Below, in pieces: positions 1 through 22,149 of a stretch of 64,000 nt of DNA. The notes beneath the pieces are model-generated. The model did not search any database, was not told where the DNA came from, and saw only the letters and a program-made list of their open reading frames with translations. Position 1 is the stretch's first letter. Each line of letters opens with the position of its first letter. The DNA is taken from IMG/VR virus record IMGVR_UViG_3300045996_002337, positions 186,001-250,000 of that record. One strand, given 5' to 3'. The position numbers were made by a program, and so were the translations under genes.

Positions 1-95
1 TTTGAACCATGCCTTGATTCTTGCAAAGAACTTACGAATTGCTTCCATCATCTTCTCCTTTATGCCAGGACAACTGGCTTGCACTATTTATGCCT

Positions 96-782
96 TCACT
101 TTGGAAGGCGTCGATTTTCAGGTAGTACGTCACGGAAATAAATTTCAGTGCTGATGTTCAAAGTTTCACCTTTGATCGAATCTAACTCCTGCGGGGTTGG
201 AACACGGTTCAAGGAAACGGTAATGTACCCCGAGAACTGTCCGTAGTACGGTGGCAGACTTGTTCTACAGACATACGGAAACCTGTTTCCTAGCCCAGGA
301 AACAACGATGCATTACCACCCTCGTTATACGCCGAGCAGGCAAACTCGCCATTGATGACCCCGACAATGCTCTCGTTGTTCTTCTCGTCAGACGTAAAGA
401 GAGGAATGCCACCGTAGCGTCCATTGAACAGCGTCTCTAGCTGGCGCTGCACTGATGCATCATCAGAGTACCATTGAATCGGCAAGCGCCGGTTGTTTCG
501 AATGTCCGCGTTCAGAACCGTGATTGCAATCACCGCATCATCGACATCAACCAAATGTTTGATTCGCGCCTTAGATGTATCTGACATGGTGAATGTCGTT
601 ACTTGAGGCGTGTCACCTTCTGGCCCATTGACAATGTAATTGACAATCACCGTGCGGTTTTCAAAGATGGTGTAGCCGATCAGTGCCACTAGAGCGGCAA
701 AGGTCCAAATCGCCACGTTCTTCAACGAGATGACGCGAATTACCTTTGCCGCAAGTGAGAACAGCCGGTCTTGAATGGCCAT
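96..782 (-). CDS. T4/T5 holin-T-like membrane protein with GAF-like periplasmic domain (paralog 1)
   Basis: One N-terminal TM segment, then about 170 aa with INGEFAC...VCRTSLPPYYGQFSGYITVSL, alignable by eye to T4 T (HLNGRHY...SCPYFNLDNIYAGTITM). TAAATA motif at 813-818. Confidence 0.6.
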   Translation of the reverse strand: MAIQDRLFSLAAKVIRVISLKNVAIWTFAALVALIGYTIFENRTVIVNYIVNGPEGDTPQVTTFTMSDTSKARIKHLVDVDDAVIAITVLNADIRNNRRLPIQWYSDDASVQRQLETLFNGRYGGIPLFTSDEKNNESIVGVINGEFACSAYNEGGNASLFPGLGNRFPYVCRTSLPPYYGQFSGYITVSLNRVPTPQELDSIKGETLNISTEIYFRDVLPENRRLPK

Positions 783-812
783 TGCGTTTTCCCTAGATTT
801 TTTCTGTCAACC

Positions 813-818
813 TATTTA
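813..818 (-). promoter_or_regulatory. T4-late-like promoter motif TAAATA (representative; about 20 intergenic copies)
   Basis: Also at 2443, 5124, 5620, 6937, 7994, 8453, 9744, 15045, 15075(+), 20038(+), 26679, 37923, 39539(+), 44250, 45831, 51472, 53594, 54928, 59292, oriented with the downstream gene. Confidence 0.6.
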
Positions 819-854
819 GGACAATGACCTCCAACCGTGACACTTACATTGGTG

Positions 855-1643
855 TCATTGGGGCTTTTTTGTGACGTCGTTTAGATAAATTTCTACCGCC
901 AAACGTGAGACTTCTAGTCGAATCGTGTCCAATTCTTGCTTTGTTAGCTGCTGACTCATCCCCACCGAAACGAAGCCGACAAACTGCCCCACGAATGGAG
1001 GGATCGCTAAGCGACAAATCGTGGGCAGTTTGCCGGCCAAGTCAGGTGCAAAACGAAAATAGATGGTGTCCTTGTAGTTGTCACACTTGAATTCATTTCC
1101 CAGGATAGCAACCATTTGAGCCGTGTTTTTTGCGTCATAATCAAACACCGCACGAGGCAAAGAAAGGGCAGATGTTATCTCTGGCGTGATAGCGACTGAG
1201 GCGTCATCGATGTAGTAGTAACGTACGACCCTGCGATTTTTCTTAAGGTCAACCTCAGAGACGCTTACGAAGGAAACGTTTGTTGATTTTGCTAAATTTT
1301 GGAGTGCTGTTTTGCTCGCCTCAGATAATTCCCAGGATGTGACGACTGGCTCGGCGGCGATGGGTGGTTGCACGAGCTTCTCGACGATGGTGAGCCGATT
1401 CTCATATAGCGAGAATAAAATCAACCCAATAATGGTGAGAAGACCGATGAGCGCAACCCGCTTGAACGTAAGCGTATCAATCAGGTCCTCAATGAAGGTT
1501 AAAACCTTTTCCTTGTCTACTTTTGGCGCGGCTGGGGCAGGAGTGGCCTCTGGTTCTGGCGAAGGTTTTGGGGCGGGAAGTTGATCTCCTTCCATTTCGG
1601 GTGCCCGAACTTCTTGATCGCTGAGAGATTTTTTGCTAGGCAT
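855..1643 (-). CDS. holin-T-like membrane protein (paralog 2); true start possibly Met at ~1595
   Basis: TM segment, LGNEFKC...ICRLAIPPFVGQFVGFVSVGM. Clear paralog of 96..782. 5' end overlaps the TAXI gene. Confidence 0.6.
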   Translation of the reverse strand: MPSKKSLSDQEVRAPEMEGDQLPAPKPSPEPEATPAPAAPKVDKEKVLTFIEDLIDTLTFKRVALIGLLTIIGLILFSLYENRLTIVEKLVQPPIAAEPVVTSWELSEASKTALQNLAKSTNVSFVSVSEVDLKKNRRVVRYYYIDDASVAITPEITSALSLPRAVFDYDAKNTAQMVAILGNEFKCDNYKDTIYFRFAPDLAGKLPTICRLAIPPFVGQFVGFVSVGMSQQLTKQELDTIRLEVSRLAVEIYLNDVTKKPQ

Positions 1644-2410
1644 GAATTGAACTCCTTGATAGCATTATCAGGTACATCGGCAGCTGCGATGAGAATAGAT
1701 TGGGTTGCCTTTGTTTCTACGGGATAATCCTGCCAAAGATACGTAAGAGCGGGGATGCGTGCTGGTTGATATACTTTTTCAAATTCTGTCTCCGTTATGG
1801 GAATCATTAGGATGCGTTCGGCCATGCTTTGCCCTAGTTCTTGAAATAGCCGTACAGGGGAACCGCCGACAATTAACATCGCGTCAACTTCACCCGTTAG
1901 AACCAGAAGAATGCTTTCTTCTGGAAGGCGGTCAACTTGAAGCCACTTGATGTTTAGCGCATTTCTGATGGTGTTGGCGGTAAACCACATTCCAGACCCA
2001 GGCAGCCCGCTTGCGACGCGCTTGCCATTGAGGTCCTTTAACGTCTTGATGCCGGATTTTTTATTGGCGATGATGGTAATTTCTTCACTGTAGAACGGCA
2101 TGACCATTTTGTAAACGGTCTTCGCCTTTGGTTCTGATCCGAGGATTGCATCGAGCGCGTCCTTTTGAACGAGCGCCAACCGATGGCCATTTTTAATTAC
2201 GGGAGGAGCAATCAGTGCGTTAATGTTAGCCAGCGAGCCTTGCGTTGGCTCTACGTTGATCTGAAACTGTGGACAGGCCTTTTGAATGTCTTCTGCAATG
2301 AGCGCATACGTGCCCTTTTGAAACCCGGTGTAGACGGTGTACAGCGGTTTACCTTGCCCGAACGTGAATGCGGGCAAGAGCAGCGTGACAACAAGCAAAA
2401 GACGTCTCAT
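1517..2410 (-). CDS. TAXI-family TRAP transporter periplasmic solute-binding protein
   Basis: Signal peptide; TGFQKGTY, TQGSLANI, LKDLNGKRVASGLPGSG, GEVDAMLIVGG, GHPKWKEI motifs. Confidence 0.8.
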   Translation of the reverse strand: MRRLLLVVTLLLPAFTFGQGKPLYTVYTGFQKGTYALIAEDIQKACPQFQINVEPTQGSLANINALIAPPVIKNGHRLALVQKDALDAILGSEPKAKTVYKMVMPFYSEEITIIANKKSGIKTLKDLNGKRVASGLPGSGMWFTANTIRNALNIKWLQVDRLPEESILLVLTGEVDAMLIVGGSPVRLFQELGQSMAERILMIPITETEFEKVYQPARIPALTYLWQDYPVETKATQSILIAAADVPDNAIKEFNSCLAKNLSAIKKFGHPKWKEINFPPQNLRQNQRPLLPQPRQK

Positions 2411-2454
2411 ATGTTTATTCCTCCATGACCCTAGGTCAGACTTATTTATGGAGC

Positions 2455-2485
2455 AAACCCCACAAAGGGCCCGAAGGCCCTAGTG
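2455..2485. terminator. intrinsic terminator-like hairpin
   Basis: gggcc-cgaa-ggccc hairpin at the 3' end of 2501..2749. Confidence 0.5.
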
Positions 2486-2500
2486 CTGGGTGTCGATGAC

Positions 2501-2749
2501 TTAGAAGAGCCAACCCATCGGGAAGCCGGGGTGCTGGCTGCGTGCAGCGTACGTTTCGTTCAGACTTTTGGCAATGTCTTGCATCGCGGTGATGCCTTCA
2601 GCTTCCGTGCCAGAGTGAATTGCGCCGCCCGGGAGGGCCGCCTTGTAGTCATGGTACATCGAGACCAGCCCATCCTGGGTGGCTGCACGAATCTTGATCT
2701 TTTCGACTTCCGTGAGGCGGTTCAGGAGGGCTTGTGCTGCTGCGTTCAT
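2501..2749 (-). CDS. hypothetical protein
   Basis: 82-aa ORF with SD-like AAGGA upstream. Confidence 0.55.
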   Translation of the reverse strand: MNAAAQALLNRLTEVEKIKIRAATQDGLVSMYHDYKAALPGGAIHSGTEAEGITAMQDIAKSLNETYAARSQHPGFPMGWLF

Positions 2750-2812: not shown

Positions 2813-3934
2813 TCACCTTCTTACGACGGCGCTAATGGCATAGTGCACCTTTTCAGCTGCAGCATCCCATGTAGAGCGCTTCACGATTTCATTTGACAGC
2901 GCTAGTCGGTGCGCCTGCTCAACCTCAGACTCCTTCAGCAGGTGCTCAATGTGCTTGATGAATTCTTCATGGCTGTAGCCAATTTCAACAACACTGCCAT
3001 AAAGTTCAACAACGTCATGCACCGCGGTTGACACGATGGGCTTCTCTGCGGCCATGTACTCAAGGGTCTTCGTTGGTGAAATGAACTTCGTGCTGTCATT
3101 AAGGGCGAAAGGCAGCATGCAGACGTCCCACCCTTGAACGATCATTGGTAGAATGGCGTAATCTTTTTGGCCCAGCCAATGAATGTTTTCACGTTGCGGC
3201 AGAATTGCAGGATCGATCTTAACAACCGGACCAACCATTACAACATGCCAACGTGGATTGGCATCGGCAATTTTTGCCACAAGCTCAACATCAAGTCGTT
3301 CGTCGATAACGCCGAAGAAGCCAATCCGTGGGTGTGGAATTTTTGTTTCTTCTTCAAACAGTGTCTCAGCTTCAATTTCACGAGCTCGAGATGGTGAATA
3401 GTGCTTAGAATCAACGCATGATGGAAGACAAATGGTGTCTGGACGAATTTTTGATTTTGCTGCCCACAATGATGGACCGCCGGCGATGACCACATCCGCG
3501 GTTTGAAGTAGATCGGCCTCACGTTCCTTTAGCTCCTTGGGCGCGTTGTGGAACATCGTCAGTTCGTCCATTACGTCGAACACGACAAAATCTGGCGAGA
3601 ATAGATTATGAAGCGGGTAGGCCTGTGGGGTGTAGAACCAAATACCATAGGAGTCATCACCGCAGCCATTTGAAAAGAACCATTCGCGCAGCAATGGGCC
3701 AAATGAAATCATGTGCTGATTGGTGAAACCCCACCCTTCCTCATTTGTGTGTGGCACTACAACGGTGATGTTAGCTGCCACCTTTGCAGTGTAGAGGTGA
3801 GGTGCGCCAGTCGTAAACATCGGCTCCTCAACGAAGACGATGTTATAGTGCTCAGCCAGCCTCGATAGAAGGTGCTGTGGACGTTGAAAAACGAAGTTCC
3901 AGCGTAGGTGGGAGAATACTAGGAGGGTTTTCAT
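2813..3934 (-). CDS. GT-B glycosyltransferase (family 4-like)
   Basis: FSHLRWNFVFQRPQHLLSRLA N-terminus, IGFFGVIDERLD, PTKTLEYMAAEKPIVST. Confidence 0.9.
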   Translation of the reverse strand: MKTLLVFSHLRWNFVFQRPQHLLSRLAEHYNIVFVEEPMFTTGAPHLYTAKVAANITVVVPHTNEEGWGFTNQHMISFGPLLREWFFSNGCGDDSYGIWFYTPQAYPLHNLFSPDFVVFDVMDELTMFHNAPKELKEREADLLQTADVVIAGGPSLWAAKSKIRPDTICLPSCVDSKHYSPSRAREIEAETLFEEETKIPHPRIGFFGVIDERLDVELVAKIADANPRWHVVMVGPVVKIDPAILPQRENIHWLGQKDYAILPMIVQGWDVCMLPFALNDSTKFISPTKTLEYMAAEKPIVSTAVHDVVELYGSVVEIGYSHEEFIKHIEHLLKESEVEQAHRLALSNEIVKRSTWDAAAEKVHYAISAVVRR

Positions 3935-5096
3935 TACGAGTCTTTCTTTTGAAATGATGTTGCCAACGACGTAGGGTTTTTAGAGACCCAAAATGATGGG
4001 TGCGGGTGTCGTTAATAATCCCGCACCGAATAATAAAACTTGGATCATGCCAACATGGCCTATCCAAGATGGGATAAATGCAAAGACCCTGCAAATTTAC
4101 ACCGTGCTTAAGGGCAACGTTTACTTCGCGCAAAACATATTCTAGCCACTGAGCGCGGTCGTCACCAAAGTGCCCCGTTTCAGATACAATGATTGGCCGT
4201 TGATATCTATCTGATACTTCTGACAGCAACGCCGAGAATGGGAGGCGGCGGGCGTCTGGTGGGTTCCAACTCAAGTGCTTGTCGGTCTGCACCTCCATTT
4301 GTCCGTTGTAATAGTAGTTGACGCCGATGAGATCTAGGGCATCTGGGTGACCGCCTAGATGGGGTTCCATAGAGCCCTTCAACAGTTCCCAAGTCTGCCA
4401 TTGGTAGCCACGTACCTCCTGTGCTAGTTCAGCTAGATCTGGGCGATCCTCTGGCGCGACAACATGTAGAAGCGGCTCGACGTGCAGGAATCGAGCGTCA
4501 GGACTAACGTCCCTCACCGCGTCCATGGCCTTCAACACTGCACGTACGAGCCGACATTTTGTTCTGTAGCCTTCATGCGCGGCTTCACTTTTGGCTCCCT
4601 CAGGGCGCCCTCGATATGGCCACATGAAATCTGTTTGTGAAGTAGCCCAGGCCAAGAAGCTTATCTCATTGATGAGATTGAAGACGGGTGGCCGTGTGTG
4701 ATATGGCTTTAGTGCTTTGGCGGCTTCAACCGCGTACTTCACAAAATGATCAATGAAAGAATCATCGAGCAGGCTCACGCCCGCAGGAGTGCCATAGTGC
4801 ATGAACGTCCAAATAATTTGGATGCCTTGCTCTTTTGCTTCCTTGGCGAATGAAATGGCGCGGCTGAAATCAATTGGCGCGTCAATGCTCGGCTGCGAAA
4901 TGCGCCAACCGATGCTTTCACGAATTGTGTAGATACCGAGTTTGTTGAGCTTTTGATAATCTTGGCGATAGTGGTCCAGGTGGCCGCTACCTTGAACCAT
5001 GTCAAGCTTATTTTCTTGTGCATTGACGTGATCTGCACCTTCAAAGCCACCCATCCAGAATGACTTGTACAGACCCGCTGTGGGTGTTTCGTTCAT
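3852..5096 (-). CDS. glycoside hydrolase, GH1-like (beta-glucosidase-like)
   Basis: SFWMGGFEGADH, INEIS (acid/base Glu), IGVNYY, IVSETG (nucleophile Glu). Confidence 0.8.
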   Translation of the reverse strand: MNETPTAGLYKSFWMGGFEGADHVNAQENKLDMVQGSGHLDHYRQDYQKLNKLGIYTIRESIGWRISQPSIDAPIDFSRAISFAKEAKEQGIQIIWTFMHYGTPAGVSLLDDSFIDHFVKYAVEAAKALKPYHTRPPVFNLINEISFLAWATSQTDFMWPYRGRPEGAKSEAAHEGYRTKCRLVRAVLKAMDAVRDVSPDARFLHVEPLLHVVAPEDRPDLAELAQEVRGYQWQTWELLKGSMEPHLGGHPDALDLIGVNYYYNGQMEVQTDKHLSWNPPDARRLPFSALLSEVSDRYQRPIIVSETGHFGDDRAQWLEYVLREVNVALKHGVNLQGLCIYPILDRPCWHDPSFIIRCGIINDTRTHHFGSLKTLRRWQHHFKRKTRNENPPSILPPTLELRFSTSTAPSIEAG

Positions 5097-5141: not shown

Positions 5142-5170
5142 AAACAAGGGTGCCCTGGGCACCCTTGTAT
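5142..5170. terminator. intrinsic terminator-like hairpin
   Basis: caagggtgcc-ctg-ggcacccttg inverted repeat. Confidence 0.6.
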
Positions 5171-15099: not shown

Positions 15100-15804
15100 G
15101 TGACGATGAGAGACTTTCTTGAACAGAACAACACGCTAGTTGTCGGTTTAGCCGTTGGCGGAACCGTGCTTGCGATCATCCTCGGCATTCTTCTGTATGG
15201 AGCTAGGGAACTTCAAGTCGAAACGCTGAAGAGAATTGATCAACCGGCTGTTGGCGCTGTGGAGCTACCAGGGCCTAAGAATCAAATCAGCGACCGTTCG
15301 AAGAAACAGGTGGATACATTGCTAGATGAAACACCCCACATCGTCGGCGGCTGGGTCACGAAGCTCCAGTATGGAAAGACGGAAAACCCCATCATTCACT
15401 TCTGGACAGAGAGTGACACCGTCAAGGACCTGATCATTGAGTTCGGAGAAATTCAGGAGAGTGGACGCGGATCGAGCTCCGCCGAGCTAAACGCGGCGAG
15501 CGAGCAGTCGCTAAGGAATTCTGAAGAAGCCAAAAGCGGTCTCATTAAGTGTGGGCCGTTGAGCGCCACAAACCTTCTTCAAATTGCACCGTCAATCGTC
15601 AACGTTGCAAAGGGAGTCTGCCGAGCAACTATCCCACCATTTGATGAAAACGTTAACCTAGGCGTGGTGGTGCTGATTGACGTTGATCCAAATGACAACA
15701 ATGCGGACATCCAAGCGATTCGCCGCACGCTGCTTCAACTTCAGATTGACGTGTTCAACCGCGATTACCAAGGTCGTGAGACCTGGGCGCGTGCGATAGA
15801 GTGA
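15100..15804 (+). CDS. holin-T-like membrane protein (paralog 3, divergent)
   Basis: TM segment, KSGLIKC...VCRATIPPFDENVNLGVVVLI...LQIDVF; TAAATA at 15075-15080. Confidence 0.55.
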   Translation: MTMRDFLEQNNTLVVGLAVGGTVLAIILGILLYGARELQVETLKRIDQPAVGAVELPGPKNQISDRSKKQVDTLLDETPHIVGGWVTKLQYGKTENPIIHFWTESDTVKDLIIEFGEIQESGRGSSSAELNAASEQSLRNSEEAKSGLIKCGPLSATNLLQIAPSIVNVAKGVCRATIPPFDENVNLGVVVLIDVDPNDNNADIQAIRRTLLQLQIDVFNRDYQGRETWARAIE

Positions 15805-19966: not shown

Positions 19967-20072
19967 GAATGCATTATAACATCCAACCTGATTTATGTAG
20001 AACTGTTACACAAAATGTTCAACCTTGGCCGTATCCATAAATAGAGGTTTGAGGATGATGAGGAGAACGAAC

Positions 20073-20831
20073 ATGGCAAAACTTTTCGCCGTGCTTTTGC
20101 TCACGCTGCTGACTGGTTGTTTTAATCACGTTGATGAGTCAAAGATTCCACTGACTGAGGATGAGCTGGCATACATTGCTGGGCACCCTACGGTCACCTT
20201 CGCGGCCGAGGATAATCGACCTCCATACATTTTTGTGGAGGGCGATCAAGTGAAGGGGCTTTCGACCGAGTACATTGAGCTGATCGCAAAGAAGACGGGT
20301 CTTAAATTCCAGCCTGTTAAAACGGGCAGCTACATCGAAAGCATGGACGCATTAGAAATGGAAAAGGTAGATGTGATGACCTCCATCAGGCCAACTCCGG
20401 AAAATACTCGGTTTATGGGCTTCACCCCGCCAATTGCATATCAGGGCGGTGTTTACGTTTTTCGGGTAAACACTCTTCCTCGTTCTCCGCTTACAACTGG
20501 ACTTCACAAAGGGTGTCCAGCCCGAGGCTACCTCGTGTCTAGATTTCCGGACATGCAGCTCGTTGACACAGTTGATGATGAAGAAGCGATTTCCCTTCTT
20601 CATAAAGGGCTGCTAGACGGAGTGGTCACTGATGCTGGAACAGCACGATACCTAACAAACAAAAGTGACGTTCAAGTGCGGTGGGCTTCCATTAACTTCG
20701 ACTTCCCGTTTTCATTTGCATACAACAGCAATGCTGTCACGCTTGGCAGCATTCTAACAAAAGCTATCTCCTCAATCACCCCCGAGGATAAGCACACCAT
20801 CAATTCACGTTGGTTAGTAGGAACAAAATAA
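20073..20831 (+). CDS. family-3 (amino-acid/PAAT-type) periplasmic substrate-binding lipoprotein
   Basis: LLTGC lipobox; LTEDELAYI...AEDNRPPYIF...G-x-x-x-EYIELIAKKTGLKF; stop overlaps the next ATG (TAATG); TAAATA at 20038-20043. Confidence 0.85.
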   Translation: MAKLFAVLLLTLLTGCFNHVDESKIPLTEDELAYIAGHPTVTFAAEDNRPPYIFVEGDQVKGLSTEYIELIAKKTGLKFQPVKTGSYIESMDALEMEKVDVMTSIRPTPENTRFMGFTPPIAYQGGVYVFRVNTLPRSPLTTGLHKGCPARGYLVSRFPDMQLVDTVDDEEAISLLHKGLLDGVVTDAGTARYLTNKSDVQVRWASINFDFPFSFAYNSNAVTLGSILTKAISSITPEDKHTINSRWLVGTK

Positions 20832-21493
20832 TGGTCATGAAGGTAACTCCCACCACTACCGCCCGTGAAGAGCGCACGTGGAAAACTCTAGCAATTGCCG
20901 CGTGTGGCGTTGCAGCCCTAACTGCGGGGCTCGTCGTGTACAAGGGGTGGGACGTGAAGGAACGAGTTGACAATCTGCCACCTGTTATCTCAAACACAAA
21001 ATTTCAAATTTCTGATCGTTCAAAAGACGCGCTGGTTGAATACATGCGTGAAGAGCCGCTCATTGTCGGCGTTGCAGCTGTTGAAGTTGATCTTGCAAAG
21101 AACACGCGCCGCACTGTTTTCTTTCAGGCAAGCTTGTCAGCTCTTCAGCGGGTGTGGGATGATTATCTAACACGCAGAGCCCCACCACCTGCAGTCTTTT
21201 CAGCTTCTTCACCTGCCCAGCAAAATGAGCGCATGGCGCACGTGATCAATGGCAACTTTGACTGTCGCCCATTTAGAGACACTGTCGGCTTCAAATACTA
21301 TCCAGAGGCAGAGAACTTTGCACCCTGGATCTGCTCAATTTCCGTTCCGCCTGGATTTACCGGCGGGGATTTTAGCGGCTTCATTACGTTTTACTTAACG
21401 CGAGAACCAGAAGACGCTGAAATGAAGAAGATGACAAAGAACGCAATTGAGCTGTCAGCTTTGATTCACCGTCGCGATATCCAGAAGAAATAA
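20831..21493 (+). CDS. holin-T-like membrane protein (paralog 4)
   Basis: TM segment, VINGNFDC...ICSISVPPGFTGGDFSGFITFYL. Confidence 0.6.
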   Translation: MVMKVTPTTTAREERTWKTLAIAACGVAALTAGLVVYKGWDVKERVDNLPPVISNTKFQISDRSKDALVEYMREEPLIVGVAAVEVDLAKNTRRTVFFQASLSALQRVWDDYLTRRAPPPAVFSASSPAQQNERMAHVINGNFDCRPFRDTVGFKYYPEAENFAPWICSISVPPGFTGGDFSGFITFYLTREPEDAEMKKMTKNAIELSALIHRRDIQKK

Positions 21494-21507
21494 GGATTGT
21501 TCACATA

Positions 21508-22149
21508 ATGCAAAACAGACCAGACCGCCTACAGTTTTGGAAACTGATCACCATCGTCTTTACGCTCATTAGCATTGTGGCCTTGGGCATCTTTGGATTT
21601 CAGCAACGTCAACCGATCGCTCTTCAAATTGTCGGGAAGCGAGTCAATTTAGATAGTGGACGAATGCCGGCACCAAGTGACGCGTCTATCAGCGAGCTGC
21701 AGGATTTTACCGAAGCCGGGGGAAACATCATGGGCATCAACGTCATTCGAGTGGATTTTAGAATGAACACCCGCAATACGACGTTCCGTCATTTTAAGGA
21801 ACCTGCAGTAACTGCTGCTTGGGAAAAATTTCTTGAGACGCAGCAGGTGGCACCGCTGTTTGGCTCTAACGAACAGACAAACCAACGTCTGATTAACCTG
21901 ATCAATGGTCAATTTCTGTGCGTTAATACCACGAACACCGTGGCGGCGCAATTGATTCCTGAAGTTGCATCACACAGTCAAACTACGTGTATGGCACCGA
22001 TCCCGCCTGGCTACGGCGACTTCGTCGGCTTCATCAATGTGTTCCTTCGCAAGGCACCCTCAGTGCAGGAGATCACTGAGCTTGAAGAATCAACTAGAAA
22101 ATTGGCGATTGACATCTACGAACGAGACGTCGTAAAAACTAAAAAATGA
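21508..22149 (+). CDS. holin-T-like membrane protein (paralog 5)
   Basis: TM segment, LINGQFLC...TCMAPIPPGYGDFVGFINVFL. Confidence 0.6.
   Translation: MQNRPDRLQFWKLITIVFTLISIVALGIFGFQQRQPIALQIVGKRVNLDSGRMPAPSDASISELQDFTEAGGNIMGINVIRVDFRMNTRNTTFRHFKEPAVTAAWEKFLETQQVAPLFGSNEQTNQRLINLINGQFLCVNTTNTVAAQLIPEVASHSQTTCMAPIPPGYGDFVGFINVFLRKAPSVQEITELEESTRKLAIDIYERDVVKTKK

What the first reader, a model, noticed from the sequence alone, without database searches (positions are those of the whole stretch)
96..2410. Locus 1: TAXI solute-binding protein plus two holin-T-like genes, with a long coding overlap
Seen: the TAXI frame continues through the conserved-looking GHPKWKEI tail to 1517, while paralog 2 starts at 1643 or 1595 in another frame, giving about 26-42 codons of dual coding. 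Known: TAXI-TRAP binding proteins typically bind organic acids or amino acids and need a fused DctQM membrane partner, which is absent here. Inference: the overlap enforces tight co-expression.
Basis: partly seen in the sequence, partly recalled or inferred. Interest (0 to 1): 0.7.

Follow-up and report, generated by a model that had tools for sequence, protein, structure and literature searches.

The report
Phage binding-protein plus holin-like gene pair
A giant bacteriophage has a gene for a secreted nutrient-binding protein whose end truly overlaps the first of two membrane proteins shaped like phage T4's lysis-timing protein; related phages keep the same three genes, so the phage may sense a small molecule in the cell envelope, possibly to time lysis.

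Summary
The window is part of a 349.7-kb jumbo-phage record. On the minus strand lie a secreted TAXI-family binding protein (2410..1517) and two paralogues (1643..855 and 782..96). No canonical start codon for paralogue 2 exists downstream of the TAXI stop, so 79 or 127 nt are read in two frames.

Comparison of 13 related loci favours the 127-nt version. An ATG at the same TAXI codon junction, with AAGGAG 8 nt upstream, is held by synonymous-site conservation in seven loci of one subclade. More distant relatives have abutting genes, so the long overlap is derived and is not needed for linkage.

No TRAP permease exists in the phage. TAXI was lost several times, while the pair was always kept.

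The same window holds a second module: an unrelated SBP_bac_3 lipoprotein abutting (TAATG) another T-like pair.

Best reading: binding-protein plus T-like envelope modules, probably controlling lysis. Function is untested.

The parts
1517..2410 (-). TAXI-family solute-binding protein gene (297 aa). The N-terminus looks like a Sec signal peptide (MRRLLLVVTLLLPAFTFG/QG). There are two phage-clade-specific conserved Cys.
   Evidence: TIGR02122 E 3e-33 and PF16868 E 1.6e-25. Nearest solved structures are 1US4/8U79/8S4J. Equivalents of the VcGluP ligand-binding residues are kept: Y35, S59, Q82, E109. The Cys pair is seen in alignment A2.
2419..2424 (-). Shine-Dalgarno GGAGGA, 8 nt before the TAXI ATG (2410)
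   Evidence: Read from the sequence.
1652..1657 (-). AAGGAG Shine-Dalgarno for paralogue 2, lying inside TAXI codons Lys-Glu, 8 nt before ATG 1643
   Evidence: AAG GAG is invariant in 6 of 7 subclade loci (CGG GAG in the seventh). GAA is the commoner Glu codon in 6 of the 7 TAXI genes, and neighbouring codons vary synonymously.
1517..1643 (-). Dual-coding overlap of 127 nt: the TAXI C-terminal helix and tail in one frame, the paralogue-2 N-terminal extension in the +2 frame
   Evidence: The region around the start folds no better than shuffles (z +1.36).
855..1643 (-). T-like paralogue 2 (262 aa). It has a disordered Pro/Ala-rich cytoplasmic N-terminus, a membrane helix at about 1404-1457, and a periplasmic GAF-like domain at about 858-1346. 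An alternative start lies at 1595.
96..782 (-). T-like paralogue 1 (228 aa). It has a short cytoplasmic N-terminus, a membrane helix at about 663-716, and a periplasmic domain with invariant C149 and C172.
   Evidence: 31% identical to paralogue 2. phrog_31287 E 1.6e-12. Protein-atlas neighbours include a cluster in which 23% of members carry PF11031. Alignments A3 and A5.
2467..2480 (-). GGGCC-TTCG-GGCCC hairpin followed by a U-rich run, between the 82-aa gene and TAXI. It may be a weak terminator or an RNA-stabilising hairpin.
   Evidence: Read from the sequence. It falls below the terminator scan's T-run threshold.
2501..2749 (-). Small 82-aa gene upstream of TAXI. In relatives that lack TAXI, its homologue sits directly before paralogue 2.
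20025..20831 (+). Locus 2: SBP_bac_3 solute-binding lipoprotein (LLTGC lipobox). Its TAA stop shares one base with the ATG (20831) of the next gene (TAATG).
   Evidence: PF00497 E 1.8e-12. The junction was read.
20810..21493 (+). Locus 2: third T-like family member in the genome (likely start ATG 20831)
   Evidence: A5 profile E 5.8e-49. ORF.
21508..22149 (+). Locus 2: fourth T-like family member in the genome
   Evidence: A5 profile E 2.4e-56.
15100..15804 (+). Solitary, more divergent fifth T-like family member
   Evidence: A5 profile E 3.3e-14. Homologues at 55% identity occur in two related jumbo-phage contigs.

Best explanation
Locus 1 is a conserved jumbo-phage envelope module of three co-oriented genes. 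The first encodes a secreted TAXI-type solute-binding protein. The other two encode anciently duplicated membrane proteins built like the T4 class III holin T: a cytoplasmic N-terminus, one membrane helix, and a periplasmic GAF-like domain with two invariant cysteines.

The long overlap is real. In one subclade the translation start of the first T-like gene moved upstream to an ATG formed at an xxA-TGY (X-Cys) codon junction inside the TAXI 3' end. It is served by an AAGGAG built on TAXI's Lys-Glu codons. This added a disordered, weakly constrained N-terminal extension to paralogue 2. In this genome TAXI also has a longer C-terminal tail than most relatives, which brings the overlap to 127 nt.

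Paralogue 2 is therefore initiated internally on mRNA that TAXI-translating ribosomes are crossing.

Inferred, not shown: the T-like pair acts in lysis control, as holin plus antiholin or as a hetero-oligomeric holin. The binding protein is a dispensable periplasmic accessory that still binds an amino-acid-like ligand.
For: Shown:
- ORFs, start codons and overlap.
- The internal ATG and its SD are kept in 7 of 7 TAXI-bearing members of one clade. The codon before Cys is TCA (five loci), ACA or GAA, so the residue changes but the third base stays A. The SD codons are AAG-GAG, although GAA is the commoner Glu codon in 6 of the 7 genes.
- A stop-free window of that length in that frame is rare elsewhere in this gene (1 of 214).
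- On the tree, each paralogue type is monophyletic (100/100) and the order paralogue 2 then paralogue 1 is fixed in all 19 loci. TAXI-bearing loci occur in both main clades, with TAXI-less loci nested among them. The overlap clade has 97/86 support, with L025 (no internal ATG) as its sister.
- TAXI always lies immediately 5' of paralogue 2 while the outer neighbours vary.

Support for a lysis role:
- A family member lies two genes upstream of a PF00959 endolysin in the 34-kb phage MW202825.1.
- The T4-like Cronobacter phage S13 has a family member but no PF11031 match, and T4 shows the reverse.

Other support:
- TAXI keeps Y35, S59, Q82 and E109, the equivalents of VcGluP Y45, S75, Q93 and E125.
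- A second, independent module in the same window pairs an SBP_bac_3 protein with two T-like genes through a TAATG junction.
Against: - There is no sequence-level homology to Phage_holin_T. hmmscan finds nothing, hhalign gives about 1% probability, and 0 of 80 family members hit PF11031 or GAF.
- The two invariant Cys do not sit where T4 T's C175 and C207 do.
- Five family members in one genome is many for a holin.
- No endolysin is adjacent. The only muralytic-like hit is an SLT-domain ORF about 90 kb away.
- TAXI was lost in at least 3-4 lineages, so it is not essential to the pair.
- Extra T-like copies in relatives are not preceded by binding proteins.
- There is no expression, start-site or lysis data.
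- S13 may have another, unrecognised holin.
Confidence: 0.5

Rival explanations
1. The TAXI protein is an ordinary auxiliary uptake gene, as PstS is in cyanophages. It delivers a glutamate-like ligand to a host TRAP or other permease, and its position next to the T-like pair has no functional meaning beyond a shared transcript for envelope proteins.
For: - The key ligand-binding residues are kept.
- In Ralstonia phage RP12 the TAXI homologue is followed by an ABC-type binding protein and a permease.
- This genome's second TAXI lies next to an ABC ATPase.
- TAXI is dispensable in several lineages.
Against: - The closest cellular TAXI is at most about 30% identical, so it is no recent host copy matched to a host permease.
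- It lies immediately 5' of paralogue 2 in all 13 TAXI-bearing loci, although the outer neighbours change.
- An unrelated binding-protein family occupies the same position before a second T-like pair.
Confidence: 0.25
2. The T-like proteins are not holins. They are membrane-anchored periplasmic GAF-like receptors (for example for superinfection exclusion, envelope remodelling or signalling) that use the binding protein as their ligand sensor. Host chemoreceptors and sensor kinases use binding proteins in this way.
For: - The genome holds five paralogues.
- Generic GAF sensor domains score almost as well as T4 T.
- No PF11031 homology is found.
- Binding proteins are known to stimulate transmembrane receptors (abstract of PMC9602780).
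Against: - The cytoplasmic part is short or disordered and has no output domain.
- The T4 T domain is the best and most complete structural match.
- One family member sits in a lysis-cassette context.
- The family and PF11031 are complementary in T4-like phages.
Confidence: 0.2
3. The overlap is an annotation illusion. Paralogue 2 starts at a rare codon (CTG or ATT) just after the TAXI stop, near the conserved DKEK motif, and the upstream open frame is not translated.
For: - Homology between the paralogues starts only at residue 44.
- Relative L025 has an ATG exactly at MDKEK, 11 nt after the TAXI stop.
- The N-terminal peptide is poorly conserved.
- The gene caller chose the shorter form, starting at M17.
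Against: - No ATG, GTG or TTG is available there in this window or in L022, L009, L005 and L024.
- The internal ATG and AAGGAG are held by synonymous-site conservation, and the frame is kept open.
- TAXI-less relatives encode long N-terminal extensions that begin MATKKP, aligned with this window's MPSKK.
Confidence: 0.08

Closest known systems
Phage T4 holin T with its periplasmic antiholin RI (class III holin; PDB 6PSK, 6PX4, 6PXE)
   Different: No detectable sequence homology to PF11031. The cysteine pair is placed differently. The proteins come as fixed tandem paralogue pairs, with five copies in this genome. The candidate periplasmic partner is a 30-kDa solute-binding protein, not the small RI. 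No binding has been shown.
phrog_31287 (uncharacterised phage family; seed includes Cronobacter phage S13 gp076)
   Same: Both paralogues match it (E 1e-11 to 1e-12). S13 gp076 matches at E 3e-105. The family has 372 clusters at 50% identity.
   Different: The family has no assigned function. The link to binding proteins and the tandem-pair arrangement were not found described in the literature searches run here.
TAXI-TRAP binding proteins such as VcGluP (8S4J) and TtGluBP (1US4)
   Same: The profile matches above the curated cut-off, the fold family is the same, and the key ligand-contacting Tyr and Gln are kept.
   Different: No QM permease is present in the genome. Identity to cellular TAXIs is at most about 30%. 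The phage clade has an added Cys pair and an invariant Trp142. The gene is always placed before a T-like gene.
Phage-encoded binding proteins as auxiliary metabolic genes (cyanophage PstS; from my own knowledge, not tested here)
   Same: A phage carries only the binding-protein part of a host uptake system.
   Different: PstS is close to host PstS and is not linked to lysis-type genes. Here the protein is highly diverged, and its gene abuts or overlaps a holin-like gene.
Lambda S105/S107 dual-start holin/antiholin
   Same: There are two in-frame starts 16 codons apart (1643 and 1595). The longer product adds a Lys-rich N-terminus (MPSKK).
   Different: The second start is forced by TAXI's conserved Lys-Trp codons and has no SD, so a dual-start mechanism is only a possibility.

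Membership tests
TAXI family TRAP solute-binding subunit (TIGR02122 / PF16868) | Profile match above the curated cut-off | tested here: met
   TIGR02122 scores 114.9 bits against a cut-off of 84.35. PF16868 scores 90.8 bits against 27.
TAXI family TRAP solute-binding subunit (TIGR02122 / PF16868) | Ligand-binding residues of characterised TAXIs (VcGluP Y45, S75, Q93, E125) | tested here: met
   Y35 is kept in 11 of 12 phage sequences, S/T59 in 11 of 12, Q82 in 12 of 12 and E109 in 11 of 12. Y200 is replaced by I/V, a site the paper calls variable.
TAXI family TRAP solute-binding subunit (TIGR02122 / PF16868) | Cognate fused DctQM membrane component encoded nearby or in the genome | tested here: not met
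   TIGR02123 and PF06808 give no match in the 349,660-bp record, which is 97% complete. A host-encoded partner cannot be examined because the host is unknown.
Phage_holin_T (PF11031, class III holin) | Sequence or profile similarity to T4 T | tested here: not met
   No hit at E<0.1 for either paralogue. No hit in the genome at E<=10. 0 of 80 family members hit. hhalign of family against family gives 1% probability. The positive control on T4 gave E 1e-119.
Phage_holin_T (PF11031, class III holin) | Topology: short cytoplasmic N-terminus, one membrane helix, large periplasmic C-terminal domain | tested here: met
   The AF2 model shows a helix at 44-81 followed by a globular domain at 104-260. 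The N-terminus is positively charged. The T4 topology is taken from PMC11413866.
Phage_holin_T (PF11031, class III holin) | Fold of the periplasmic domain | tested here: met
Phage_holin_T (PF11031, class III holin) | Conserved periplasmic cysteine pair at the T4 positions (C175, C207) | tested here: inconclusive
   The family has two invariant Cys (C149 and C172 in paralogue 1; A5). Only the second lies beside a PY-motif like that next to T4 C175. The partner Cys differs.
Phage_holin_T (PF11031, class III holin) | Hole formation, endolysin release and control of lysis timing | not testable with these tools
   Only context is available. A family member lies two genes from an endolysin in MW202825.1. 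The family and PF11031 are complementary in S13 and T4.
GAF domain (PF01590) | Profile match | tested here: not met
   No Pfam GAF hit for the paralogues or for 80 family members. Only the fold is similar.
Functional same-strand overlapping gene pair (internal start within the upstream ORF) | Start codon and SD conserved by synonymous-site constraint in the upstream gene, and alternative frame kept open | tested here: met
   Seven of 7 subclade loci. Stop-free windows of the required length are rare in the same frame elsewhere in these genes (0.005 to 0.52 per locus).

The most novel reading that the evidence does not exclude
The binding proteins are ligand-sensing partners of the T-like membrane proteins, a small-molecule-responsive counterpart of the T4 RI antiholin. 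TAXI in locus 1 and the SBP_bac_3 lipoprotein in locus 2 would dock on the periplasmic GAF-like domains of their T-like pair, depending on whether ligand is bound. The jumbo phage could then delay or trigger lysis (or another envelope event) according to a nutrient or signal in the periplasm. That would be a new, modular class of lysis-timing sensor.
Probability: 0.22. Interest if true: 0.85.

Novelty: new variant of a known kind. Interest (0 to 1): 0.6.

Why it matters
Lysis timing is a central fitness trait of phages. The only well-understood sensor of the environment is T4 lysis inhibition, where the small periplasmic protein RI binds the periplasmic domain of holin T.

Here a large, unannotated phage family has the T-holin fold and topology. 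It is repeatedly encoded directly behind secreted solute-binding proteins of two unrelated families. In one clade the coupling is so tight that the reading frames overlap by about 70-130 nt.

If the binding proteins gate the T-like proteins, phages would be reading small molecules in the host periplasm to decide when to lyse. Even without that, three results stand:
- It gives phrog_31287 (372 sequence clusters) a testable function.
- It shows a well-supported case of an N-terminal extension overprinted on the end of a neighbouring gene.
- It shows that 'orphan' TAXI proteins in jumbo phages form their own old clade.

Tried and rejected
- **Complex prediction.** A job with the paralogue-2 periplasmic domain, the paralogue-1 periplasmic domain and mature TAXI gave the verdict 'no answer'. 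It is not used as evidence either way.
- They were left out (A4) and not sent elsewhere.
- **Sequence tests of T-holin membership.** All were negative: hmmscan, PF11031 on the genome, the PDB profile search, hhalign against T4 T and against a 29-member T alignment.
- **tblastn of paralogue 2 against 50,697 phage records.** No match. Paralogue 1 and the locus-2 member found only S13-like phages and one 34-kb phage.
- **Close relatives of locus 2 in IMG/VR.** None found, and none for its binding protein among phage records. Conservation of locus 2 is therefore unknown.
- **Sequencing runs.** Only one wastewater DNA run holds 7% of the sampled words, so no reads were laid and there is no RNA evidence.
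- **Neighbours of TAXI homologues in RsoM2USA, RP12 and Motura.** They are not T-like. They are a two-helix coiled-coil membrane protein and a small membrane protein (phrog_27316) of unknown function.
- **An RNA structure hiding the paralogue-2 start.** Rejected: the region folds no better than shuffles.
- **Other endolysin families in the genome.** PF00959, PF01510 and PF00182 gave no hits. For PF00182 the search's own controls did not ring, so that result is uninformative.
- **Sampling of distant family members.** The two lookups turned out to belong to the clade B already sampled. They add little independent evidence.
Full report
**Setting.** The window is bases 186,001-250,000 of a single 349,660-bp virus record (IMG/VR, linear, CheckV 97% complete). 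It is therefore a jumbo phage, not a cell.

In the region of the finding, all genes lie on the minus strand. They follow a strong terminator-like hairpin at 5168-5144. The order is:
- a GH1-like gene (5096..3852)
- a GT1-type glycosyltransferase (3934..2813)
- an 82-aa gene (2749..2501)
- TAXI (2410..1517)
- paralogue 2 (1643..855)
- paralogue 1 (782..96)

Beyond the window edge the genome continues with a 111-aa Lys/Glu-rich ORF, a 48-aa membrane ORF, NUDIX, HNH and a Ro60/TROVE-vWA gene.

TAXI (297 aa) ends at TAG 1519-1517, after GHPKWKEI and a 21-residue Gln/Pro/Arg-rich tail. In the paralogue-2 frame the only canonical starts before the membrane helix are ATG 1643 and ATG 1595.

ATG 1643 has AAGGAG (1657-1652) 8 nt upstream, whereas ATG 1595 has no SD. 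The region is not more structured than shuffled sequence (z +1.36). Elsewhere in this TAXI gene the same frame carries 12 stops in 255 codons, and only 1 of 214 windows of 42 codons is open.

**Comparative evidence on the overlap.** Homologues of paralogue 2 (72 proteins) and of TAXI led to 20 distinct related loci from metagenomic jumbo-phage contigs of up to 376 kb.
- All have paralogue 2 followed by paralogue 1.
- Thirteen also have TAXI immediately 5' of paralogue 2.
- Seven have no TAXI.

A tree of both paralogues from 19 of these loci shows each type to be monophyletic (100/100), so the duplication is old. TAXI-bearing loci occur in both main clades, with TAXI-less loci nested among them. 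TAXI is therefore ancestral and was lost at least 3-4 times.

In the more distant TAXI-bearing loci (L015, L017, L018, L019, L065) the TAXI stop and the paralogue-2 ATG abut, at -10 to +4 nt. In L025 an ATG sits at the conserved MDKEK motif, 11 nt after the stop.

In the sister clade of L025 (support 97/86), all seven TAXI-bearing members share two features. They have an ATG at the same TAXI codon junction, xxA-TGY, just before the conserved Cys. They also have AAGGAG (GGGAG in one) 8 nt upstream, giving overlaps of 70-130 nt.

The codon before Cys is TCA in five loci, ACA in one and GAA in one. The amino acid changes but the third base stays A. The SD codons stay AAG-GAG, although GAA is the commoner Glu codon in 6 of the 7 genes and adjacent codons vary synonymously.

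The second candidate start (ATG or GTG inside the codons AAR-TGG) is forced by TAXI's conserved Lys-Trp, so it carries no information. TAXI-less relatives encode long Pro-rich N-termini beginning MATKKP, which align with this window's MPSKK.

I conclude that the 127-nt overlap is most likely real. It arose once by an upstream shift of the paralogue-2 start. It is lengthened here because this TAXI tail (21 residues after KEI) is longer than in all but one relative: L022 has 22, the others 0-13.

The overprinted peptide itself is weakly constrained. It is a disordered extension laid over TAXI's conserved last helix. TAXI's unconserved tail in turn lies over paralogue 2's unconserved linker.

**What the paralogues are.** Pfam and NCBIfam find nothing. 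PHROGs puts both in phrog_31287, of unknown function.

[quoted passage not shown] Viral structure hits include proteins named class III holin or T holin. A protein-language-model search puts paralogue 1 next to a cluster in which 23% of members carry PF11031.

Every sequence test of membership fails, however. The two invariant cysteines are not at T4's positions. So 'holin-T-like' is right as a description of shape and wrong as a family assignment.

The family is large, with 372 clusters at 50% identity and typical lengths of 215-230 aa.

Two pieces of context favour a lysis role:
- In the 34-kb phage MW202825.1, a member lies two genes upstream of a PF00959 endolysin.
- The T4-like Cronobacter phage S13 has one member (E 2.6e-27) and no PF11031 match. 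T4 has PF11031 (E 1e-119) and no member.

**What TAXI is.** It is a clear TAXI-family protein with a signal-peptide-like N-terminus. Its nearest cellular relatives are at most about 30% identical, while phage relatives reach 69%.

The phage clade includes homologues in Ralstonia phages RsoM2USA and RP12 and in Achromobacter phage Motura. It shares two cysteines that cellular TAXIs lack and an invariant Trp142.

The residues that bind glutamate in VcGluP are kept, including the two critical ones, Y45 and Q93 (PMC11574862). Here they are Y35, S59, Q82 and E109. The protein probably still binds an amino-acid-like ligand.

The phage genome encodes no TRAP permease. For a phage this is unremarkable.

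**A second module.** Searching the genome with the family profile found five members, not two.

At 20025-22149 (+) an SBP_bac_3 solute-binding lipoprotein (PF00497, E 1.8e-12) is followed by two further T-like genes. Its TAA stop shares a base with the ATG of the first of them, as TAATG. A different binding-protein family thus sits in the same position before another T-like pair.

No relatives of this second module were found. Extra T-like copies in related phages lack a binding protein upstream.

A fifth, solitary member lies at 15100-15804. A second, membrane-anchored TAXI lies next to an ABC ATPase at genome position 269,221-269,982, outside the window.

**Interpretation.**

Shown:
- a real, conserved dual-coding overlap with an internal SD and ATG
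- a conserved TAXI-T-like-T-like triad
- the T4-T-like fold and topology
- retained ligand-binding residues
- a second binding-protein plus T-like pair

Inferred:
- the pair works in lysis control
- the binding protein is a periplasmic accessory

Whether the binding protein touches the T-like domains is open. The single complex-prediction job returned no verdict. The most novel reading, a ligand-sensing antiholin-like partner, remains possible at roughly one chance in four or five.

What is conserved is adjacency on one transcript. The long overlap is a derived feature of one subclade.

Noticed in passing
window 20025-22149 (+): A second module: an SBP_bac_3 lipoprotein (268-aa ORF, LLTGC lipobox) whose TAA stop shares a base with the ATG (20831) of the first of two more T-like family genes (to 21493, and 21508-22149). 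This is the same architecture as locus 1 but with an unrelated binding-protein family.
   Followed up: partly
window 15100-15804 (+): A solitary, divergent fifth member of the T-like family (234 aa). It is flanked on the opposite strand by a 291-aa ORF and two small membrane ORFs. Homologues at 55% identity occur in two related jumbo-phage contigs.
   Followed up: partly
outside the window: G000:C1:269221-269982 (-), locus L038 1423-2493: A second TAXI gene (356 aa). It has an N-terminal membrane anchor and a PQ-repeat linker, lies directly downstream of an ABC-transporter ATPase gene, and has a C-terminus like that of the Ralstonia phage RsoM2USA TAXI.
   Followed up: partly
window 3852-3934 (-): The GH1-like ORF (5096..3852) carries a 26-residue C-terminal tail that three relatives lack. 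The tail overlaps the glycosyltransferase start (3934) by 83 nt, whereas relatives have a 4-nt overlap or a small gap. This is a second long overlap in this genome caused by a late stop in the upstream gene.
   Followed up: partly
window 1-84 and genome positions just below the window (G000:C1:181,250-186,084): Downstream of paralogue 1 lie a 111-aa Lys/Glu-rich helical ORF, a 48-aa single-helix ORF, NUDIX, HNH and a 566-aa Ro60/TROVE-vWA gene. The NUDIX-HNH(-TROVE) block is syntenic in most related loci. The two small ORFs could be further lysis or regulatory components.
   Followed up: no
L001, L002, L003 (Ralstonia phages RsoM2USA and RP12, Achromobacter phage Motura): In these cultured jumbo phages the TAXI homologue is preceded by a two-helix membrane protein with a long coiled coil (phrog_27316 in RP12 and Motura) and a small single-helix protein. 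In RP12 it is followed by an ABC-type binding protein and a permease. All of these are unannotated.
   Followed up: partly
L027 (Cronobacter phage S13, NC_028773.1, 53403-53984): This T4-like Straboviridae phage has no Pfam Phage_holin_T match anywhere in its genome. It does have one phrog_31287 member (gp076), annotated as hypothetical, which is a candidate for its missing holin.
   Followed up: partly
window 5144-5168 (-): A strong terminator-like hairpin (11-bp stem, 7 G-C pairs) followed by a U-rich run, just upstream of the GH1-like gene. It probably marks the start of the transcription unit that contains locus 1.
   Followed up: no
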